A stretch of DNA of 64,000 bases from IMG/VR virus record IMGVR_UViG_3300028864_000014, positions 1 through 64,000 of that record, one strand, 5' to 3'. Every line of letters starts with the position of its first letter. Position 1 is the first letter of the stretch. Below are positions 1-3,593 of this stretch, one piece after another. The translations under genes and the position numbers were made by a program. Under the pieces are notes generated by a model. That model had not been told where the DNA came from. It ran no database searches and was given only the letters and a program-made list of their open reading frames with translations.

Positions 1-240
1 CAGGTAGCTCAGGAACATCAGGTAGTTCTGGTAGCTCAGGCACATCAGGCAGTTCTGGAACATCAGGTAGCTCAGGCACATCAGGTAGCTCAGGCACATC
101 AGGTAGCTCAGGAACATCAGGTAGTTCTGGTAGCTCAGGCACATCAGGCAGTTCTGGAACATCAGGTAGCTCAGGCACATCAGGTAGCTCAGGCACATCA
201 GGAATTCGTGGAACATCAGGTAGCTCAGGAACATCAGGTA
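1..240 (+). repeat. Coding tandem repeat, 9/18-nt units (GGT AGC TCA GGA ACA TCA) encoding (GSSGTS)n
   Basis: Seen directly; Gly every third residue. Confidence 0.95.
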
Positions 241-1010
241 TTAATGGAGCAGATGGATTTGCATCTATAGCAGGAACAACAAATAATGGATTAATAACTT
301 TAAATGAATTATCTCCAAACGTTAGTTCTCATAGTGGATTGACATTTGATGGACGCAATTTAAATATTTGTGGTAATATAGTATTACCTAGCTCATCAGG
401 AACTGGAATATTATTAGGAAATAAAATTCCAACATTTGGATATAGAGACTTAATTGGACAAATAATAACTAGAATTGAAGGATCTGGAACACCAAATAGA
501 GAATCAATAAGAGGTACAAAAATACTTAATTATGCATTTAAAGTTAATGATGATATCGATAATATAACATATCAAATTCCTCATGATTATGTGCCAAATA
601 CTCCTATATTTTTAGATATTCATTGGACTCATAACGGTACATCTATTTCTGGTAATTTTGGAATAAATTACTATATGAATTATTGTAAAGGATATAATCA
701 ATCTGGACAAATTTTTAATTCCGAATTGACAGTTTCTCAATCAATATCAATATCAGGAATTTCATCAAATCCAAGATGGGGACATTTCATTAATGAAATT
801 CAAATAAGCAACAATGGAGGTGATTCATCACATTTAAATACTTCTTTATTAGAAGCAGATGGATTAATAGAATTAGCATTAAGTGTATCAAGTATTCCAA
901 CTATATCTGGAGGTACAACTAATTTACCGTTCATACTATCTGTCGATATTCATTATCAAACAACAGGAGTATTAGGCACAAAAAATGATAACTATCCTTT
1001 TTATACTTAA
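3..1010 (+). CDS. Gly/Ser/Thr-repeat (collagen-like) virion or tail-fibre protein, 5' truncated by the window
   Basis: Open frame from position 3 reads GSSGTSGSSGSSGTS... and continues in frame into the ORF-track entry 339..1010. Confidence 0.75.
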   Translation, partial: GSSGTSGSSGSSGTSGSSGTSGSSGTSGSSGTSGSSGTSGSSGSSGTSGSSGTSGSSGTSGSSGTSGIRGTSGSSGTSGINGADGFASIAGTTNNGLITLNELSPNVSSHSGLTFDGRNLNICGNIVLPSSSGTGILLGNKIPTFGYRDLIGQIITRIEGSGTPNRESIRGTKILNYAFKVNDDIDNITYQIPHDYVPNTPIFLDIHWTHNGTSISGNFGINYYMNYCKGYNQSGQIFNSELTVSQSISISGISSNPRWGHFINEIQISNNGGDSSHLNTSLLEADGLIELALSVSSIPTISGGTTNLPFILSVDIHYQTTGVLGTKNDNYPFYT

Positions 1011-1914: not shown

Positions 1915-1917
1915 ATG

Positions 1918-2108
1918 TGCTCACGACCAGGCTCGAACTGGCATCTCATTTTTTAGTTAGGTCACTAAACGCGCTTCCTTTTCACCAACTCAATGATTAC
2001 TTTACTCAGTGCATCCTCAAATATACAGTCATTGAACCGAACAAGCTCAACCACATACCCTAACACTAGCTTCGTTTACTAGCGACTGTCCCTTAGTCTA
2101 ACATGAAC
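1918..2108 (-). ncRNA. 191-nt tRNA-like RNA with about 123-nt insert at the variable-arm position
   Basis: Acceptor GTTCATG/CGTGAGC, D stem GACT/AGTC, stem CTAGT/GCTAG with loop AAACGAA, T arm GCCAG-TTCGAGC-CTGGT. Confidence 0.65.
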
Positions 2109-2118
2109 TTTATAATTG

Positions 2119-2192
2119 TGATCCTGAAGGGATTCAAACCCTTGACCCTCGCCTTAGAAGGGCGATGCTCTATTCAACTGAGCTACAGAACC
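2119..2192 (-). tRNA. tRNA-Arg(TCT), canonical
   Basis: Full cloverleaf, anticodon arm TCGCC-CTTCTAA-GGCGA. Confidence 0.93.
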
Positions 2193-2211
2193 GTTGTTTT
2201 TTATTACTCTG

Positions 2212-2243
2212 TAAAAGTAGTGTTTTATTTTGATACTACCAAA
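2212..2243 (-). promoter_or_regulatory. Bacteroidota-type promoter inside the tRNA array, upstream of Arg(TCT) and the 191-nt RNA
   Basis: Minus strand TTTG-N20-TACTTTTA, one mismatch to TAnnTTTG. Confidence 0.5.
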
Positions 2244-2292
2244 CATTTTACACTAAATATAGATATAATTTTTATAAAAGTTTATTTAATTG

Positions 2293-2376
2293 AGCACAAT
2301 ATCAGACTCGAACTGATGAAATCTTTTCAGATGCTGGGTTACAAAGCCAGAGCAATAGCCACTATGCGAATTGTGC
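2293..2376 (-). tRNA. tRNA-Thr(TGT) with long variable arm
   Basis: GCACAAT/ATTGTGC acceptor, U73, loop TT-TGT-AA (C:C at 31:39), variable arm ATCT-GAAA-AGAT. Confidence 0.8.
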
Positions 2377-2384
2377 ATTTATTG

Positions 2385-2457
2385 AGCTTTAGAAAGGACT
2401 TGAACCCTCAACATTTACCTTACAAGGGTAACGTTCTACCAATTGAACTACTAAAGC
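2385..2457 (-). tRNA. tRNA-Thr(TGT), canonical
   Basis: Anticodon arm TTACC-CTTGTAA-GGTAA, U73. Confidence 0.93.
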
Positions 2458-2467
2458 ATTTTTATTG

Positions 2468-2542
2468 TCGGAATGACAAGATTCGAACTTGCAATAACCT
2501 GGTGTCCAATACCAGTAACCTCTCTCTATGGATCGCATTCCG
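2468..2542 (-). tRNA. tRNA-Pro(TGG)
   Basis: CGGAATG/CATTCCG acceptor, CTGGT-ATTGGAC-ACCAG; atypical D loop and A32. Confidence 0.85.
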
Positions 2543-2554
2543 TTGTTTTTATTG

Positions 2555-2626
2555 AGCCAAGGGTGAGAGTCAAACTCACGACATCCACGTTACTAAGGTG
2601 GCGCTCTATCACTGAGCTACATCGGC
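2555..2626 (-). tRNA. tRNA-Thr(AGT)
   Basis: CCACC-TTAGTAA-CGTGG anticodon arm, G1-C72, C2-G71, U73. Confidence 0.82.
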
Positions 2627-2633
2627 ATTATTG

Positions 2634-2708
2634 TAGGACTTATTGGAATCGAACCAATGACGTTTTGCTTGTTAAACAAATACTCTGAACCAACTGAGTT
2701 AAAATCCT
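2634..2708 (-). tRNA. tRNA-Val(AAC)
   Basis: TTTGT-TTAACAA-GCAAA anticodon arm, full cloverleaf. Confidence 0.88.
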
Positions 2709-2722
2709 ATATTCAAAAAAAG

Positions 2723-2793
2723 TAGCCCCAGATGGAATCGAACCATCTCCCAAACCTTGTAATAGTCATACGCTTCCGTTACGCCACAGGGCC
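2723..2793 (-). tRNA. tRNA-Val(TAC), degenerate
   Basis: Good T arm GATGG-TTCGATT-CCATC; weak acceptor and anticodon stems (TGACT-ATTACAA-GGTTT). Confidence 0.55.
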
Positions 2794-2801
2794 AAATTTA
2801 G

Positions 2802-2887
2802 AGCAAGTAAAGGGATTCGAACCCTCGGTGTGATATTATCTTTCTAGATTGGAAATCTAGTGCAATCGACCTCTATGCGACACTTGC
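2802..2887 (-). tRNA. tRNA-Gly(TCC) with long variable arm
   Basis: CTAGA-TTTCCAA-TCTAG, 17-nt variable region, U73. Confidence 0.85.
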
Positions 2888-2908
2888 GTTAATTTATTTT
2901 AATATTTG

Positions 2909-2993
2909 AGCGATAGATGAGATTCAAACTCACGGTGTGCTTTCGCTTACTGGATTGGCAACCCAGCGCCATCGGTCTCTAGGCGACTATCGC
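2909..2993 (-). tRNA. tRNA-Gly(GCC) with long variable arm
   Basis: CTGGG-TTGCCAA-TCCAG, 16-nt variable region with GC-GAAA-GC hairpin, U73. Confidence 0.85.
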
Positions 2994-3029
2994 ATTATTT
3001 ATAATCATTTATGTAACTATCTGATTATG

Positions 3030-3106
3030 TGGAGCTTATGGGCATCGAACCCACCTGTTATTCCTCTGTGCAAGAGAGGCGACCACTCCAAGCAGTCCCA
3101 AGTCCC
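3030..3106 (-). tRNA. tRNA-Ala(TGC)
   Basis: CCTCT-CTTGCAC-AGAGG, G3:U70 identity pair present. Confidence 0.88.
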
Positions 3107-3181
3107 ATTATTAATTGTTTTTATAAAAATCTAAAAATTTTTCAATTTCGTTTTACTTTTCCGAACTATGTTTTTGTTATG

Positions 3182-3268
3182 TCGGGTAGGTGAGATTCGA
3201 ACTCACGATGACTATACGTTCCCTCATGTTCCCAAAACACGTATGCTAACCAACTACACCACTACCCG
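3182..3268 (-). tRNA. tRNA-Pro(TGG) with long variable region
   Basis: CGGGTAG/CTACCCG acceptor, CGTGT-TTTGGGA-ACATG, 18-nt variable region. Confidence 0.85.
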
Positions 3269-3340: not shown

Positions 3341-3399
3341 TCAGGTGAAGAAGAGTCGAACTTCCTTGTGCCTGATCCTGACACTACCACATACACCTG
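3341..3399 (-). ncRNA. D-armless 59-nt tRNA-like element, GAT (Ile) in the central loop
   Basis: CAGGTGT/TCACCTG, 8-nt connector ATGTGGTA, GTGTC-AGGATCA-GGCAC, T arm GGAAG-TTCGACT-CTTCT. Confidence 0.55.
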
Positions 3400-3410
3400 A
3401 TATTTTACTG

Positions 3411-3489
3411 TGACCCAGGAGGGGGTTGAACCCTCATTTTTCATTCCATTATGCACATAGAGTTTAGAAAACTCCGCCATTACAAGGCC
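3411..3489 (-). tRNA. D-armless tRNA-Arg(TCT)-like gene with 23-nt variable insert
   Basis: GGCCTTG/CTGGGTC, connector TAATGGC, GGAGT-TTTCTAA-ACTCT, T arm GAGGG-TTCAACC-CCCTC. Confidence 0.7.
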
Positions 3490-3502
3490 ATTATTTATTT
3501 TG

Positions 3503-3581
3503 TGATCCAGAAGAGACTCGAACTCTCATTTTTCATTCCATTATGCACATAGAATTTAGGAAATTCTGCCACTACAGGACC
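3503..3581 (-). tRNA. D-armless tRNA-Arg(CCT)-like gene with the identical 23-nt variable insert
   Basis: GGTCCTG/CTGGATC, connector TAGTGGC, AGAAT-TTCCTAA-ATTCT, T arm GAGAG-TTCGAGT-CTCTT. Confidence 0.7.
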
Positions 3582-3593
3582 AATTAATTATTT

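What the first reader, a model, noticed from the sequence alone, without database searches (positions are those of the whole stretch)
2293..3268. Gly, Thr and Pro anticodons on class-II (long variable arm) tRNA bodies
Seen: Thr(TGT) 2293-2376, Gly(TCC) 2802-2887, Gly(GCC) 2909-2993 and Pro(TGG) 3182-3268 carry 16-18 nt variable regions, two with GAAA tetraloops. They have 3-bp D stems with enlarged D loops, as in Leu/Ser/Tyr tRNAs. They retain cognate acceptor identity (G1-C72, C2-G71, U73 for Gly/Thr; C1-G72, A73 for Pro). Canonical short Thr(TGT) and Pro(TGG) copies coexist in the array. Established: bacterial long arms are normally limited to Leu/Ser/Tyr/Sec, SerRS recognises the long arm rather than the anticodon, and nematode nev-tRNA-Gly with a long arm is charged with Leu in vitro. 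Inference: these are either reshaped cognate tRNAs that evade host tRNases, or tRNAs charged with Ser/Leu that mistranslate.
Basis: partly seen in the sequence, partly recalled or inferred. Interest (0 to 1): 0.72.

Follow-up and report, generated by a model that had tools for sequence, protein, structure and literature searches.

The report
Long-armed phage tRNAs for Thr, Gly, Pro
A huge peat-soil phage carries threonine, glycine and proline tRNAs built on the long-armed body plan that bacteria normally reserve for Leu/Ser/Tyr. The same design is widespread in phages and keeps the correct charging signals, so these look like working, correctly charged tRNAs rather than mistranslators.

Summary
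On the minus strand of a 24% G+C fragment of a huge phage, ARAGORN and Rfam both call Thr(UGU) 2293-2376, Gly(UCC) 2802-2887, Gly(GCC) 2909-2993 and Pro(UGG) 3182-3268, with 16-18-nt variable regions.

They are not a local oddity. Relatives of this phage keep them, with compensatory changes in the variable-arm stem. A motif scan of IMG/VR found at least 118 contigs, which gave 76 distinct long-arm Thr(UGU) genes. The same loci hold long-arm Gly, Pro, Val, Met, Asn, Ile, His, Cys, Lys and Trp tRNAs. Isolated Aeromonas and Pseudomonas phages have long-arm Thr too.

All 76 long Thr genes have G1-C72 and U73, and 75 of 76 have C2-G71. All 16 long Gly genes have the same set. Long Pro genes all have A73. 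None carries the Ser set (G2-C71, G73). The variable-arm helix covaries strongly. Its geometry matches tRNA-Tyr, and the D arm matches tRNA-Ser.

In three Spirosoma genomes an identical long-arm gene is the only Thr(UGU) found, so the design appears to work as tRNA-Thr. The codons read (ACA, GGA, CCA) are the phage's commonest and behave as ordinary synonyms.

Cognate charging is the best reading, and Ser/Leu mischarging is unlikely. Why phages favour this body is unknown. I found no paper describing it.

The parts
2293..2376 (-). Long-arm tRNA-Thr(UGU), 84 nt. Three-bp D stem; variable arm at 2318-2333 = 1 nt + AUCU/AGAU stem + GAAA tetraloop + 3 nt; G1-C72, C2-G71, U73; no encoded CCA.
   Evidence: ARAGORN; Rfam 44.3 bits; 67.1 bits to the long-Thr covariance model R1; hairpin present in the MFE fold; the G001 orthologue has AUCC/GGAU, a compensatory change.
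2802..2887 (-). Long-arm tRNA-Gly(UCC), 86 nt. Same D-arm motif as the long Thr; 17-nt variable region at 2827-2843 (weak GAU/AUC stem, ACACC tail); G1-C72, C2-G71, A3-U70, U73.
   Evidence: (53.9 bits); 66.8 bits to R1; the variable-region core GAUAAUAUCACA is conserved in six distinct tRNAs whose acceptor stems differ; the stem register is supported at family level.
2909..2993 (-). Long-arm tRNA-Gly(GCC), 85 nt. Variable region at 2934-2949 with GC-GAAA-GC; G1-C72, C2-G71, G3-C70, U73.
   Evidence: (43.9 bits); R1 57.7 bits; the G004 orthologue has GAC-GAAA-GUC; hairpin present in the MFE fold.
3182..3268 (-). Long tRNA-Pro(UGG), 87 nt. Ordinary 4-bp D stem. The variable region at 3207-3224 is the canonical AGGUC loop with a 13-nt insert that pairs poorly. 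C1-G72, A73.
   Evidence: (55.3 bits); only 38.4 bits to R1; a 75-nt homologue with an AGGUC loop lies in L126; other phages have AGG + hairpin + UC.
2385..2457 (-). Canonical class-I tRNA-Thr(UGU), the same anticodon as the long-arm copy next to it.
   Evidence: (69.1 bits).
2468..2542 (-). Short Pro(UGG)-like tRNA (anticodon loop AUUGGAC, C1-G72, A73) with a poor D arm.
   Evidence: RF00005 33.7 bits; not called by ARAGORN; 96% identical copy in G001/G006.
2119..3106 (-). Span that holds the rest of the array, interleaved with the parts above: Arg(UCU) 2119-2192, Thr(AGU) 2555-2626, Val(AAC) 2634-2708, Val(UAC) 2723-2793, and Ala(UGC) 3029-3106 (78 nt, 3-bp D stem, 8-nt variable loop).
3410..3582 (-). 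Two tandem tRNA-like genes with anticodons UCU and CCU. They lack a normal D arm and have a conserved 23-nt variable region. They belong to the same array of unusual tRNAs.
   Evidence: Sequence; ARAGORN mis-call; conservation in relatives and in unrelated contigs.

Best explanation
These are working elongator tRNAs that read the phage's favourite A-ending codons: ACA, GGA and CCA, plus GGC/GGU for Gly(GCC). They are most likely charged with the amino acid their anticodon names (Thr, Gly, Pro) by the host's ordinary synthetases. They are built on a long-variable-arm (class II-like) body.

The Thr and both Gly genes share one body. It has a Ser-type 3-bp D arm (U8 C9 GCN UAGNGNNCGAU NGC) and a short variable hairpin laid out as in bacterial tRNA-Tyr. 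The layout for Thr is 1 nt, a 3-4-bp stem, a tetraloop and 3 nt ending in C48. The Gly genes have the same kind of hairpin with longer unpaired flanks. The body also has a G15-C48 Levitt pair, a normal 7/5 acceptor/T helix and a normal anticodon loop with U33 and A37.

ThrRS and GlyRS use the same acceptor signals (G1-C72, C2-G71; U73 for Gly). One body can therefore serve both isotypes by changing only the anticodon.

The Pro gene has a different origin. It is an ordinary Pro tRNA with a 13-nt insert in its variable loop.

Shown: the genes, their conservation, the covariation of the extra helix, the cognate identity sets, wide occurrence in phages, and apparent sole use as Thr(UGU) in Spirosoma. 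Inferred: expression, CCA addition by the host, cognate charging, and use on the ribosome in this particular phage. The selective reason for the long arm is unknown.
For: (1) The genes are real and conserved. Relatives at 67-86% protein identity keep long Thr(UGU), Gly(UCC) and Gly(GCC), with compensatory or stem-lengthening changes: AUCU/AGAU to AUCC/GGAU to UUC/GAA, and GC/GC to GAC/GUC.

(2) The family is large. An IMG/VR motif scan hit at least 118 contigs and gave 76 distinct long Thr(UGU) genes.

(3) The extra helix covaries. In a gap-free alignment of 27 genes, 98.4% of cells pair. All 3 variable-arm pairs change on both sides, with 4-5 pair types each. Slid controls pair at 30-41%, and 0 of 500 shuffles reach the observed values.

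(4) Identity follows the anticodon. Long Thr: G1-C72 76/76, C2-G71 75/76, U73 76/76, the same as short phage Thr(UGU). Long Gly: 16/16 for each of the three. Long Pro: A73 9/9. Long Asn, His, Cys, Trp and Lys carry their own discriminators. Ser tRNAs in the same loci have G2-C71, A3-U70 and mostly G73.

(5) The variable arm is 11-19 nt (mode 14) with a 3-4-bp stem, like Tyr. Ser has 5-7 bp.

(6) Tertiary positions are kept: G15 71/71 and C48 75/76.

(7) Natural experiment. Three Spirosoma genomes carry an identical long Thr(UGU). No canonical Thr(UGU) was found, while a control pattern finds Thr(GGU) and Thr(CGU). The gene sits among ordinary chromosomal genes.

(8) ACA, GGA and CCA make up 51-55% of the phage's Thr, Gly and Pro codons. 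In 15 orthologues of a 1200-aa protein, these sites align with Thr 67%, Gly 79% and Pro 77%, and with Ser only about 5%. They exchange with ACT, GGT and CCT.

(9) In 87 of 95 IMG/VR loci that hold a long Thr(UGU), it is the only Thr(UGU) in the locus.
Against: There is no expression or charging data. No RNA run was listed for this phage. None of the four genes encodes CCA, and no CCA-adding enzyme or class-II synthetase core was found in the 235 kb held, so everything depends on an unknown host.

A long arm plus U73 was considered compatible with SerRS for allo-tRNAs (PMC5389517), so some serylation cannot be excluded from sequence alone.

The variable regions of the window's Gly(UCC) and Pro genes are weakly paired. 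The long Pro is seen only in this phage and its near-identical copy, so it is the least secure of the four.

The IMG/VR family was ascertained with a D-arm motif, so its D-arm uniformity is partly by construction.

The Spirosoma tRNA list came from a search that scored 150 of 308 candidates. Absence of a canonical Thr(UGU) rests on that list and on one pattern search.
Confidence: 0.7

Rival explanations
1. Mischarging: the long arm recruits SerRS (or LeuRS or TyrRS), so the tRNAs insert Ser, Leu or Tyr at Thr, Gly and Pro codons. This would cause deliberate or tolerated mistranslation, as proposed for nematode nev-tRNAs and bacterial allo-tRNAs.
For: SerRS reads the long arm and not the anticodon. 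U73 was judged compatible with serylation for allo-tRNAs (PMC5389517). nev-tRNA-Gly is leucylated in vitro (PMC3333845). The D arm of the long Thr and Gly genes, including C11-G24, is the one found almost only in tRNA-Ser in bacterial genomes (112 of 114 motif hits). The Pro gene has A73, the main Leu determinant.
Against: G2-C71, A3-U70 and G73 of tRNA-Ser are replaced by C2-G71 and U73 in 75-76 of 76 long Thr and 16 of 16 long Gly genes. The variable stem is 3-4 bp with 3 unpaired 3' nt, against 5-7 bp and 1 nt in Ser. The codons concerned are the phage's most used and behave as synonyms of other Thr, Gly and Pro codons. In Spirosoma the long-arm gene appears to be the only Thr(UGU). The long form is usually the only Thr(UGU) in a phage locus. 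The acceptor set tracks the anticodon in every isotype seen, which makes no sense if another synthetase were the target.
Confidence: 0.07
2. Cognately charged, but the long arm is an adaptation. In this reading it makes the phage tRNAs poor substrates for host tRNA-cleaving or tRNA-modifying defence enzymes, or lets a phage factor tell phage tRNAs from host tRNAs. This concerns the selective reason and is compatible with the best explanation.
For: Phage tRNAs are known to rescue infection from tRNA-targeting defences (PMC11555353; Retron-Eco7 PMC12673091; Septu cutting the tRNA-Tyr variable loop PMC13096335). The window keeps structurally different copies with the same anticodon side by side: Thr(UGU) short and long, Pro(UGG) short and long, and Arg(UCU) canonical and D-arm-less. 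G004 keeps short and long Gly(GCC). Long arms occur in about 13 or more class-I isotypes in phage arrays. The Gly(UCC) variable region is conserved in sequence while acceptor stems drift.
Against: No defence system is known to me that is blocked by a long variable arm. Most loci carry only the long form (87 of 95), so redundancy is not the rule. Spirosoma uses the design with no phage context. A neutral origin explains the data equally well: one alloacceptor switch from a class II tRNA, then spread through phage tRNA arrays.
Confidence: 0.25
3. Not used in translation: decaying duplicates, decoys, or tRNA-like regulatory or processing elements inside a polycistronic tRNA transcript.
For: The array contains several plainly aberrant tRNA-like genes at 3341-3400, 3410-3582 and 1917-2109. 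The window's Pro insert pairs poorly. Canonical Thr(UGU) and a short Pro(UGG) are present as well. Some irregular tRNAs in metagenomes are charged but not used in translation (PMC5389517).
Against: All helices covary, including the extra one, with 98.4% of cells paired. Anticodon loops are intact, with U33, A37 and the anticodon invariant. Identity sets are conserved. Spirosoma appears to depend on one of these genes. The design persists across relatives at 67% protein identity.
Confidence: 0.08

Closest known systems
Nematode nev-tRNAs (V-arm-containing tRNA-Gly(CCC) and tRNA-Ile(UAU); PMC3333845, PMC4300185)
   Same: A class II long variable arm on tRNAs whose anticodons belong to class-I amino acids, including Gly and Ile. 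Both are conserved gene families.
   Different: nev-tRNAs carry leucine identity and are leucylated in vitro. The phage tRNAs carry the identity set of their own anticodon. nev-tRNAs are eukaryotic nuclear genes. These are phage genes, with a copy in Spirosoma.
Bacterial allo-tRNAs and 8/4 tRNA-Ser/His of bacteria and phages (PMC5389517)
   Same: A long variable arm combined with many non-Ser anticodons. Some occur in phage tRNA clusters. U73 occurs.
   Different: allo-tRNAs have an 8/4 or 9/3 acceptor/T arrangement, a tRNA-Sec-like D stem with a tetraloop, and predicted Ser identity. The tRNAs here have the normal 7/5 arrangement, a 3-bp D stem with an 11-nt loop, and cognate acceptor sets.
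Bacterial tRNA-Tyr (class II)
   Same: Same variable-arm layout: 1 unpaired nt, 3-bp stem, 3-4-nt loop, 3 unpaired nt, and 13-14 nt in total. tRNA-Tyr gives the best bacterial hits to the long-Thr model after true long Thr genes (60-65 bits).
   Different: Tyr has G2-C71, A73 and the GUA anticodon. The long Thr and Gly genes have C2-G71, U73 and UGU, UCC or GCC.
Bacterial tRNA-Ser(UGA)
   Same: Same D-arm motif (112 of 114 bacterial motif hits are Ser). The anticodon loop differs from Thr(UGU) by one base (CUUGAAA against CUUGUAA). R1 scores are 57-63 bits.
   Different: Ser has G2-C71, A3-U70, G73 and a 5-7-bp variable stem with 1 unpaired 3' nt.
Ordinary phage-encoded tRNAs for codon supply or defence evasion (for example PMC11555353)
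   Same: Clustered in arrays, read the phage's preferred A/U-ending codons, and rely on host synthetases.
   Different: In the papers I found, evasion is attributed to the phage supplying specific tRNAs (PMC11555353); from memory, some variants differ in the anticodon loop. Here the whole body plan is changed.

Membership tests
tRNA (Rfam RF00005) | Cloverleaf scoring above the gathering threshold (29 bits) | tested here: met
   43.9-55.3 bits for the four genes. ARAGORN calls all four.
Class II (long-variable-arm) tRNA architecture | Variable region of 10 nt or more that forms a stem-loop | tested here: met
   The variable regions are 16-18 nt. For Thr the helix is supported by covariation and by the MFE fold. 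For Gly a 2-3-bp stem is supported at family level. For Pro the pairing is poor.
Class II (long-variable-arm) tRNA architecture | Three-bp D stem with positions 13 and 22 unpaired and an enlarged D loop | tested here: met
   Met for Thr and both Gly genes (helix 2). Not met for Pro, which has a 4-bp D stem.
Bacterial tRNA-Thr identity (ThrRS) | G1-C72, C2-G71, G35, U36 (identity rules recalled from the literature) | tested here: met
   Present in the window gene. In the family: 76/76, 75/76, and an invariant UGU anticodon. Actual charging was not tested.
Bacterial tRNA-Gly identity (GlyRS) | U73, G1-C72, C2-G71, (G3-C70), C35, C36 | tested here: met
   Both window genes have U73, G1-C72 and C2-G71. 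Position 3:70 is G-C in Gly(GCC) and A-U in Gly(UCC). The family gives 16/16 for each.
Bacterial tRNA-Pro identity (ProRS) | A73, C1-G72, G35, G36 | tested here: met
   Window gene. Long Pro genes: A73 9/9 and C1-G72 7/9.
tRNA-Ser identity (SerRS substrate) | Long variable arm plus G2-C71, A3-U70, G73 and C11-G24 | tested here: not met
   C2-G71 and U73 replace G2-C71 and G73. The variable stem is 3-4 bp, against 5-7 bp in Ser. Only C11-G24 and the D-arm motif are Ser-like.
tRNA-Leu / tRNA-Tyr identity | A73 discriminator (both), GUA anticodon (Tyr) | tested here: not met
   Thr and Gly have U73. Pro has A73, but with a Pro-type C1-G72 and a class-I D arm. The tertiary Leu determinants were not assessed.
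allo-tRNA (PMC5389517) | 8/4 or 9/3 acceptor/T-stem arrangement with a tRNA-Sec-like D arm | tested here: not met
   A 7-bp acceptor and a 5-bp T stem with full pairing.
nev-tRNA (PMC3333845) | Nematode nuclear genes with Leu identity that are leucylated | tested here: not met
   These are phage or bacterial genes with cognate identity sets. Charging was not testable.
Functional, aminoacylated tRNA | Expressed, processed, given a CCA end and charged | not testable with these tools
   No RNA run was listed. CCA is not encoded in the window genes.

The most novel reading that the evidence does not exclude
Phages hold a large, so far undescribed class of tRNAs in which class-I isotypes are rebuilt on a long-variable-arm body while keeping cognate identity. 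About 13 class-I isotypes show it, with Thr(UGU) by far the commonest. In this reading the long arm is selected because it protects the phage's translation supply from host tRNA-targeting immunity, or marks phage tRNAs for a phage factor. The design is good enough that a bacterial genus (Spirosoma) has adopted one as what appears to be its only tRNA-Thr(UGU).
Probability: 0.25. Interest if true: 0.85.

Novelty: new variant of a known kind. Interest (0 to 1): 0.68.

Why it matters
Textbooks state that in bacteria only Leu, Ser, Tyr (and Sec) tRNAs carry a long variable arm, and that the arm is itself an identity signal. These data show that phages break that rule. A covarying extra helix sits on Thr, Gly and many other tRNAs that otherwise carry normal cognate identity sets.

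At least one free-living bacterial genus appears to depend on such a tRNA. If charging is cognate, ThrRS, GlyRS and other synthetases, EF-Tu and the ribosome all tolerate a class II body. That is useful for tRNA engineering and orthogonal pairs.

It also raises a testable question about why phages favour the design, with defence evasion the obvious candidate. In practice, annotation pipelines may mislabel or skip such genes.

The shared Thr/Gly body is also a clear natural case of a tRNA body moving between amino acids that share acceptor identity.

Tried and rejected
(1) BLAST of the window's long Thr and long Gly(UCC) genes against 50,697 phage records gave one weak hit and none. A family member (L126) as query found isolates. 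Another (L060) found 4 records, and L111 found none. BLAST is too insensitive for a census.

It was replaced by a D-arm plus T-loop pattern.

(3) No RNA run was listed for expression. Read laying was not used, because only DNA contigs were on offer.

(4) Phage-encoded synthetase or CCA enzyme: PF00587 and PF01743 were not found in the 235 kb held. The record is only about one third of the genome, so this says little.

(5) Single-sequence folding energies are unremarkable (z-scores -0.3 to -2.0) and were not used as evidence.

(6) Codon reassignment was rejected. ACA, GGA and CCA sites align with Thr, Gly and Pro and with their synonymous codons in orthologues.

(7) 'Redundant pairs as a rule' was rejected. 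Short and long copies with the same anticodon occur in only 8 of 95 loci with a long Thr(UGU). These loci are fragments, so this is a lower bound.

(8) The origin of the body (Ser(UGA) by an A36U change, or Tyr(GUA) by a shift in the loop) could not be settled. The D arm says Ser and the variable arm says Tyr.

(9) Literature: seven full-text searches and four papers read found no description of these tRNAs. Subscription journals are largely outside the library.

(10) The host was not identified.
Full report
**Context.** The window is the first 64 kb of a 235,318-bp IMG/VR virus record (24.4% G+C). CheckV rates the record about 33% complete, so it is a fragment of a very large phage. It encodes phage-type functions: a baseplate spike with an M23 peptidase, a DnaB-like helicase and a ribonucleotide reductase. 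Peat metagenome runs hold most of the region's sampled words, at least 60% in 16 runs. A tRNA array lies on the minus strand between about 1915 and 3600. A second array, made only of Leu tRNAs, lies at 137.5 kb.

**Observation.** ARAGORN and Rfam agree on Thr(UGU) 2293-2376, Gly(UCC) 2802-2887, Gly(GCC) 2909-2993 and Pro(UGG) 3182-3268. Their variable regions are 16, 17, 16 and 18 nt.
- Thr has a clean AUCU-GAAA-AGAU hairpin.
- Gly(GCC) has GC-GAAA-GC.
- Gly(UCC) has at best GAU-AAU-AUC.
- The Pro insert pairs poorly.
- Thr and both Gly genes have a 3-bp D stem and an 11-nt D loop with a shared motif. Pro has an ordinary 4-bp D stem.
- All four have the acceptor and discriminator features of their own isotype.
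- A canonical Thr(UGU) lies next door at 2385-2457. A weak short Pro(UGG) lies at 2468-2542.

**Conservation in relatives.** A 1200-aa protein 13 kb from the array retrieved 31 related loci from IMG/VR. Six of the related records carry tRNA arrays that I fetched.
- Long Thr(UGU) is present in G001/G006, G003 and G004.
- Its variable stem changes from AUCU/AGAU to AUCC/GGAU and UUC/GAA while the GAAA loop stays.
- Long Gly(GCC) has GAC-GAAA-GUC in G004.
- G004 adds a long Thr(CGU) and a long Val(UAC), and keeps a short Gly(GCC) beside the long one.
- The long Pro is seen only in this phage and its identical copy G005.

**A large phage family.** I scanned IMG/VR for the shared D-arm motif plus the common T loop, allowing any distance between them. 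ARAGORN on those loci found motif-bearing tRNAs that were overwhelmingly long Thr(UGU) (89 genes). The rest were Gly(UCC), Gly(GCC), Met, Asn, His, Trp and one Ser.
- The same loci hold other long-arm tRNAs for class-I isotypes that were not selected for. These include Pro, Val, Ile, Cys, Lys, Glu and Gln, mostly with neat hairpins and GNRA loops.
- Conversely, 28 of 82 Leu tRNAs have a short variable loop.
- Isolated phages also carry long Thr: Aeromonas phage PX29 and relatives, Pseudomonas phage HPP-Temi (annotated tRNA-Thr, 85-87 nt) and the 636-kb phage LR756504.

**Structure.** A gap-free alignment of 27 long Thr(UGU) genes with a 14-nt variable region (A1) was scored against the five-helix structure.
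- 98.4% of cells pair, and 20 of 23 pairs change on both sides.
- The three variable-arm pairs each show 4-5 pair types.
- Sliding the partners gives 30-41% pairing, and 0 of 500 shuffles reach the observed values.
- Across all 76 distinct genes the layout is 1 unpaired nt, a 3-5-bp stem, mostly a tetraloop (GAAA 18 times), and 3 unpaired nt ending in C.
- G15 and that final C (C48) are nearly invariant.
- This is the layout of tRNA-Tyr (1 + 3 bp + 3). It is not that of Ser (1 + 5-7 bp + 1) or Leu (0 + 4 bp + 1).
- For the long Gly genes a 2-3-bp stem in one register is supported (100%, 80% and 54% pairing, against about 10% in most other registers).

**Identity.** The acceptor set follows the anticodon in every group.
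- Long Thr: G1-C72 76/76, C2-G71 75/76, U73 76/76, as in the short phage Thr(UGU).
- Long Gly: 16/16 for each of the three.
- Long Pro: A73 9/9.
- Long Asn has G73, His has an extra 5' G with C73, Cys has U73, Trp mostly G73 (4 of 5), and Lys mostly A73 (6 of 7).
- Ser tRNAs in the same loci and in bacteria have G2-C71, A3-U70 and mostly G73.

A covariance model of long Thr (R1) scores the window's Thr at 67.1 bits and Gly(UCC) at 66.8. It scores Gly(GCC) at 57.7 and Pro at only 38.4. Thr and Gly therefore share one body. ThrRS and GlyRS use the same acceptor signals, so a change of anticodon is enough to move the body between them. Pro is different. A 75-nt homologue in L126 has the loop AGGUC where the window has AGG + 13 nt + UC.

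**Bacteria.** The same motif scan on one genome per prokaryotic species returned tRNA-Ser in 112 of 114 cases, mostly Ser(UGA) of Actinomycetota. It returned long Thr(UGU) in only two, both Spirosoma.
- R1 found the identical gene in 3 of 151 Cytophagales genomes. It found the gene in none of 150 other Bacteroidota sampled at the threshold that separates it from Tyr and Ser hits.
- In Spirosoma fluviale, the 40 tRNAs recovered include Thr(CGU), Thr(GGU) and the long Thr(UGU), but no canonical Thr(UGU).
- A pattern that finds the canonical Thr(GGU) and Thr(CGU) in all three genomes finds no UGU version.
- The gene's neighbours are ordinary chromosomal genes.
- These bacteria appear to rely on the long-arm tRNA to read ACA. 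That is hard to reconcile with anything but threonine charging.

**Coding evidence.** In the phage, ACA, GGA and CCA are 51%, 55% and 55% of Thr, Gly and Pro codons. In 15 orthologues of the 1200-aa protein, the sites where the window has these codons align as follows.
- Thr 67%, Gly 79% and Pro 77%, with Ser at about 5%.
- This is no different from ACT, GGT and CCT sites.
- The sites often align with those synonymous codons themselves.

This excludes reassignment and makes heavy mistranslation of the commonest codons implausible. It cannot exclude a low level.

**Interpretation.** The best reading is that these are cognately charged supply tRNAs on a class II-like body, part of a widespread phage lineage (confidence about 0.7).
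- Mischarging by SerRS, LeuRS or TyrRS is unlikely (about 0.07).
- A role outside translation is unlikely for Thr and Gly (about 0.08). It is least excluded for the Pro gene.
- Why the body is favoured is open. A neutral legacy of an old switch from a Ser- or Tyr-like tRNA fits the data. So does selection for resistance to tRNA-targeting defences, a theme in recent phage work (PMC11555353, PMC12673091, PMC13096335).
- The window does keep structurally different tRNAs with the same anticodon side by side (Thr, Pro, Arg). Across IMG/VR loci, however, the long Thr is usually the only Thr(UGU).

**Comparison with the known.** nev-tRNAs and allo-tRNAs are the nearest precedents. Both are thought to carry Leu or Ser identity, and allo-tRNAs have 8/4 or 9/3 helices. 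Neither holds here. Seven full-text searches and four papers read turned up no description of long-arm Thr, Gly or Pro tRNAs in phages. The library lacks most subscription journals, so prior mention elsewhere is possible. Isolate genomes already annotate such genes simply as tRNA-Thr.

**Limits.**
- There are no expression or charging data.
- The host is unknown.
- ARAGORN folds of the rarer long isotypes were not checked one by one.

Noticed in passing
window 3410-3490 and 3504-3582, minus strand: Two tandem tRNA-like genes with anticodon loops UUUCUAA (UCU) and UUCCUAA (CCU). Each has a normal acceptor, anticodon arm and T arm. Only about 7 nt stand in place of the D arm. The 23-nt variable region is conserved in sequence, and its CAU-AAUGGA-AUG hairpin looks like a displaced D arm. 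ARAGORN mis-folds one as a 94-nt Arg(cct). The pair is conserved in all relatives, in unrelated IMG/VR contigs (L087, L090, L065) and in the 735-kb phages LR756501/LR756503. A canonical Arg(UCU) lies at 2119-2192.
   Followed up: partly
window 3341-3400, minus strand: A 60-nt mini tRNA-like element: a 7-bp acceptor, a T arm and a single 5-bp hairpin with loop AGGAUCA (no U33). It is 87% conserved in G001/G006 and 81% in G007.
   Followed up: partly
window 1917-2109, minus strand: An element of about 190 nt whose ends pair like an acceptor stem (GUUCAUG/CGUGAGC). It has a T-arm-like GCCAGUUCGAGCCUGGU before the 3' end. No homologue was found in the relatives' arrays.
   Followed up: partly
window 3029-3106, minus strand: tRNA-Ala(UGC) of 78 nt. 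It keeps G3-U70 but has a 3-bp D stem, a large D loop and an 8-nt variable loop. It is conserved in G003 and G004.
   Followed up: partly
G000:C1:137519-137971 (outside the window): A second array of five Leu tRNAs (UAA x2, AAG, CAA, UAG). The CAA one is class-I sized (75 nt, 5-nt variable loop). In the IMG/VR loci, 28 of 82 Leu tRNAs have a 5-7-nt variable loop.
   Followed up: partly
L175 / L319 (Spirosoma fluviale), and G051, G085: Three Spirosoma genomes share an identical 85-nt long-arm tRNA-Thr(UGU) in an ordinary chromosomal setting. It appears to be their only Thr(UGU). Its T arm (GGGGGUUCGAAUCCCUC) is identical to that of the same genome's tRNA-Ser(UGA).
   Followed up: yes
L159 1588-1675 (Pseudomonas phage HPP-Temi) and H47 (Rhizobium phage RHph_I1_18): HPP-Temi annotates an 88-nt tRNA-Phe next to its 87-nt tRNA-Thr. 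A tRNA-Lys of a Rhizobium phage matched a long-Thr query at 80% identity. Both may be further long-arm class-I isotypes in isolates.
   Followed up: no
window 3-1010, plus strand: An open reading frame that runs off the window start. It has a long collagen-like GSS/GTS repeat followed by a globular C-terminal domain, which suggests a tail fibre.
   Followed up: no
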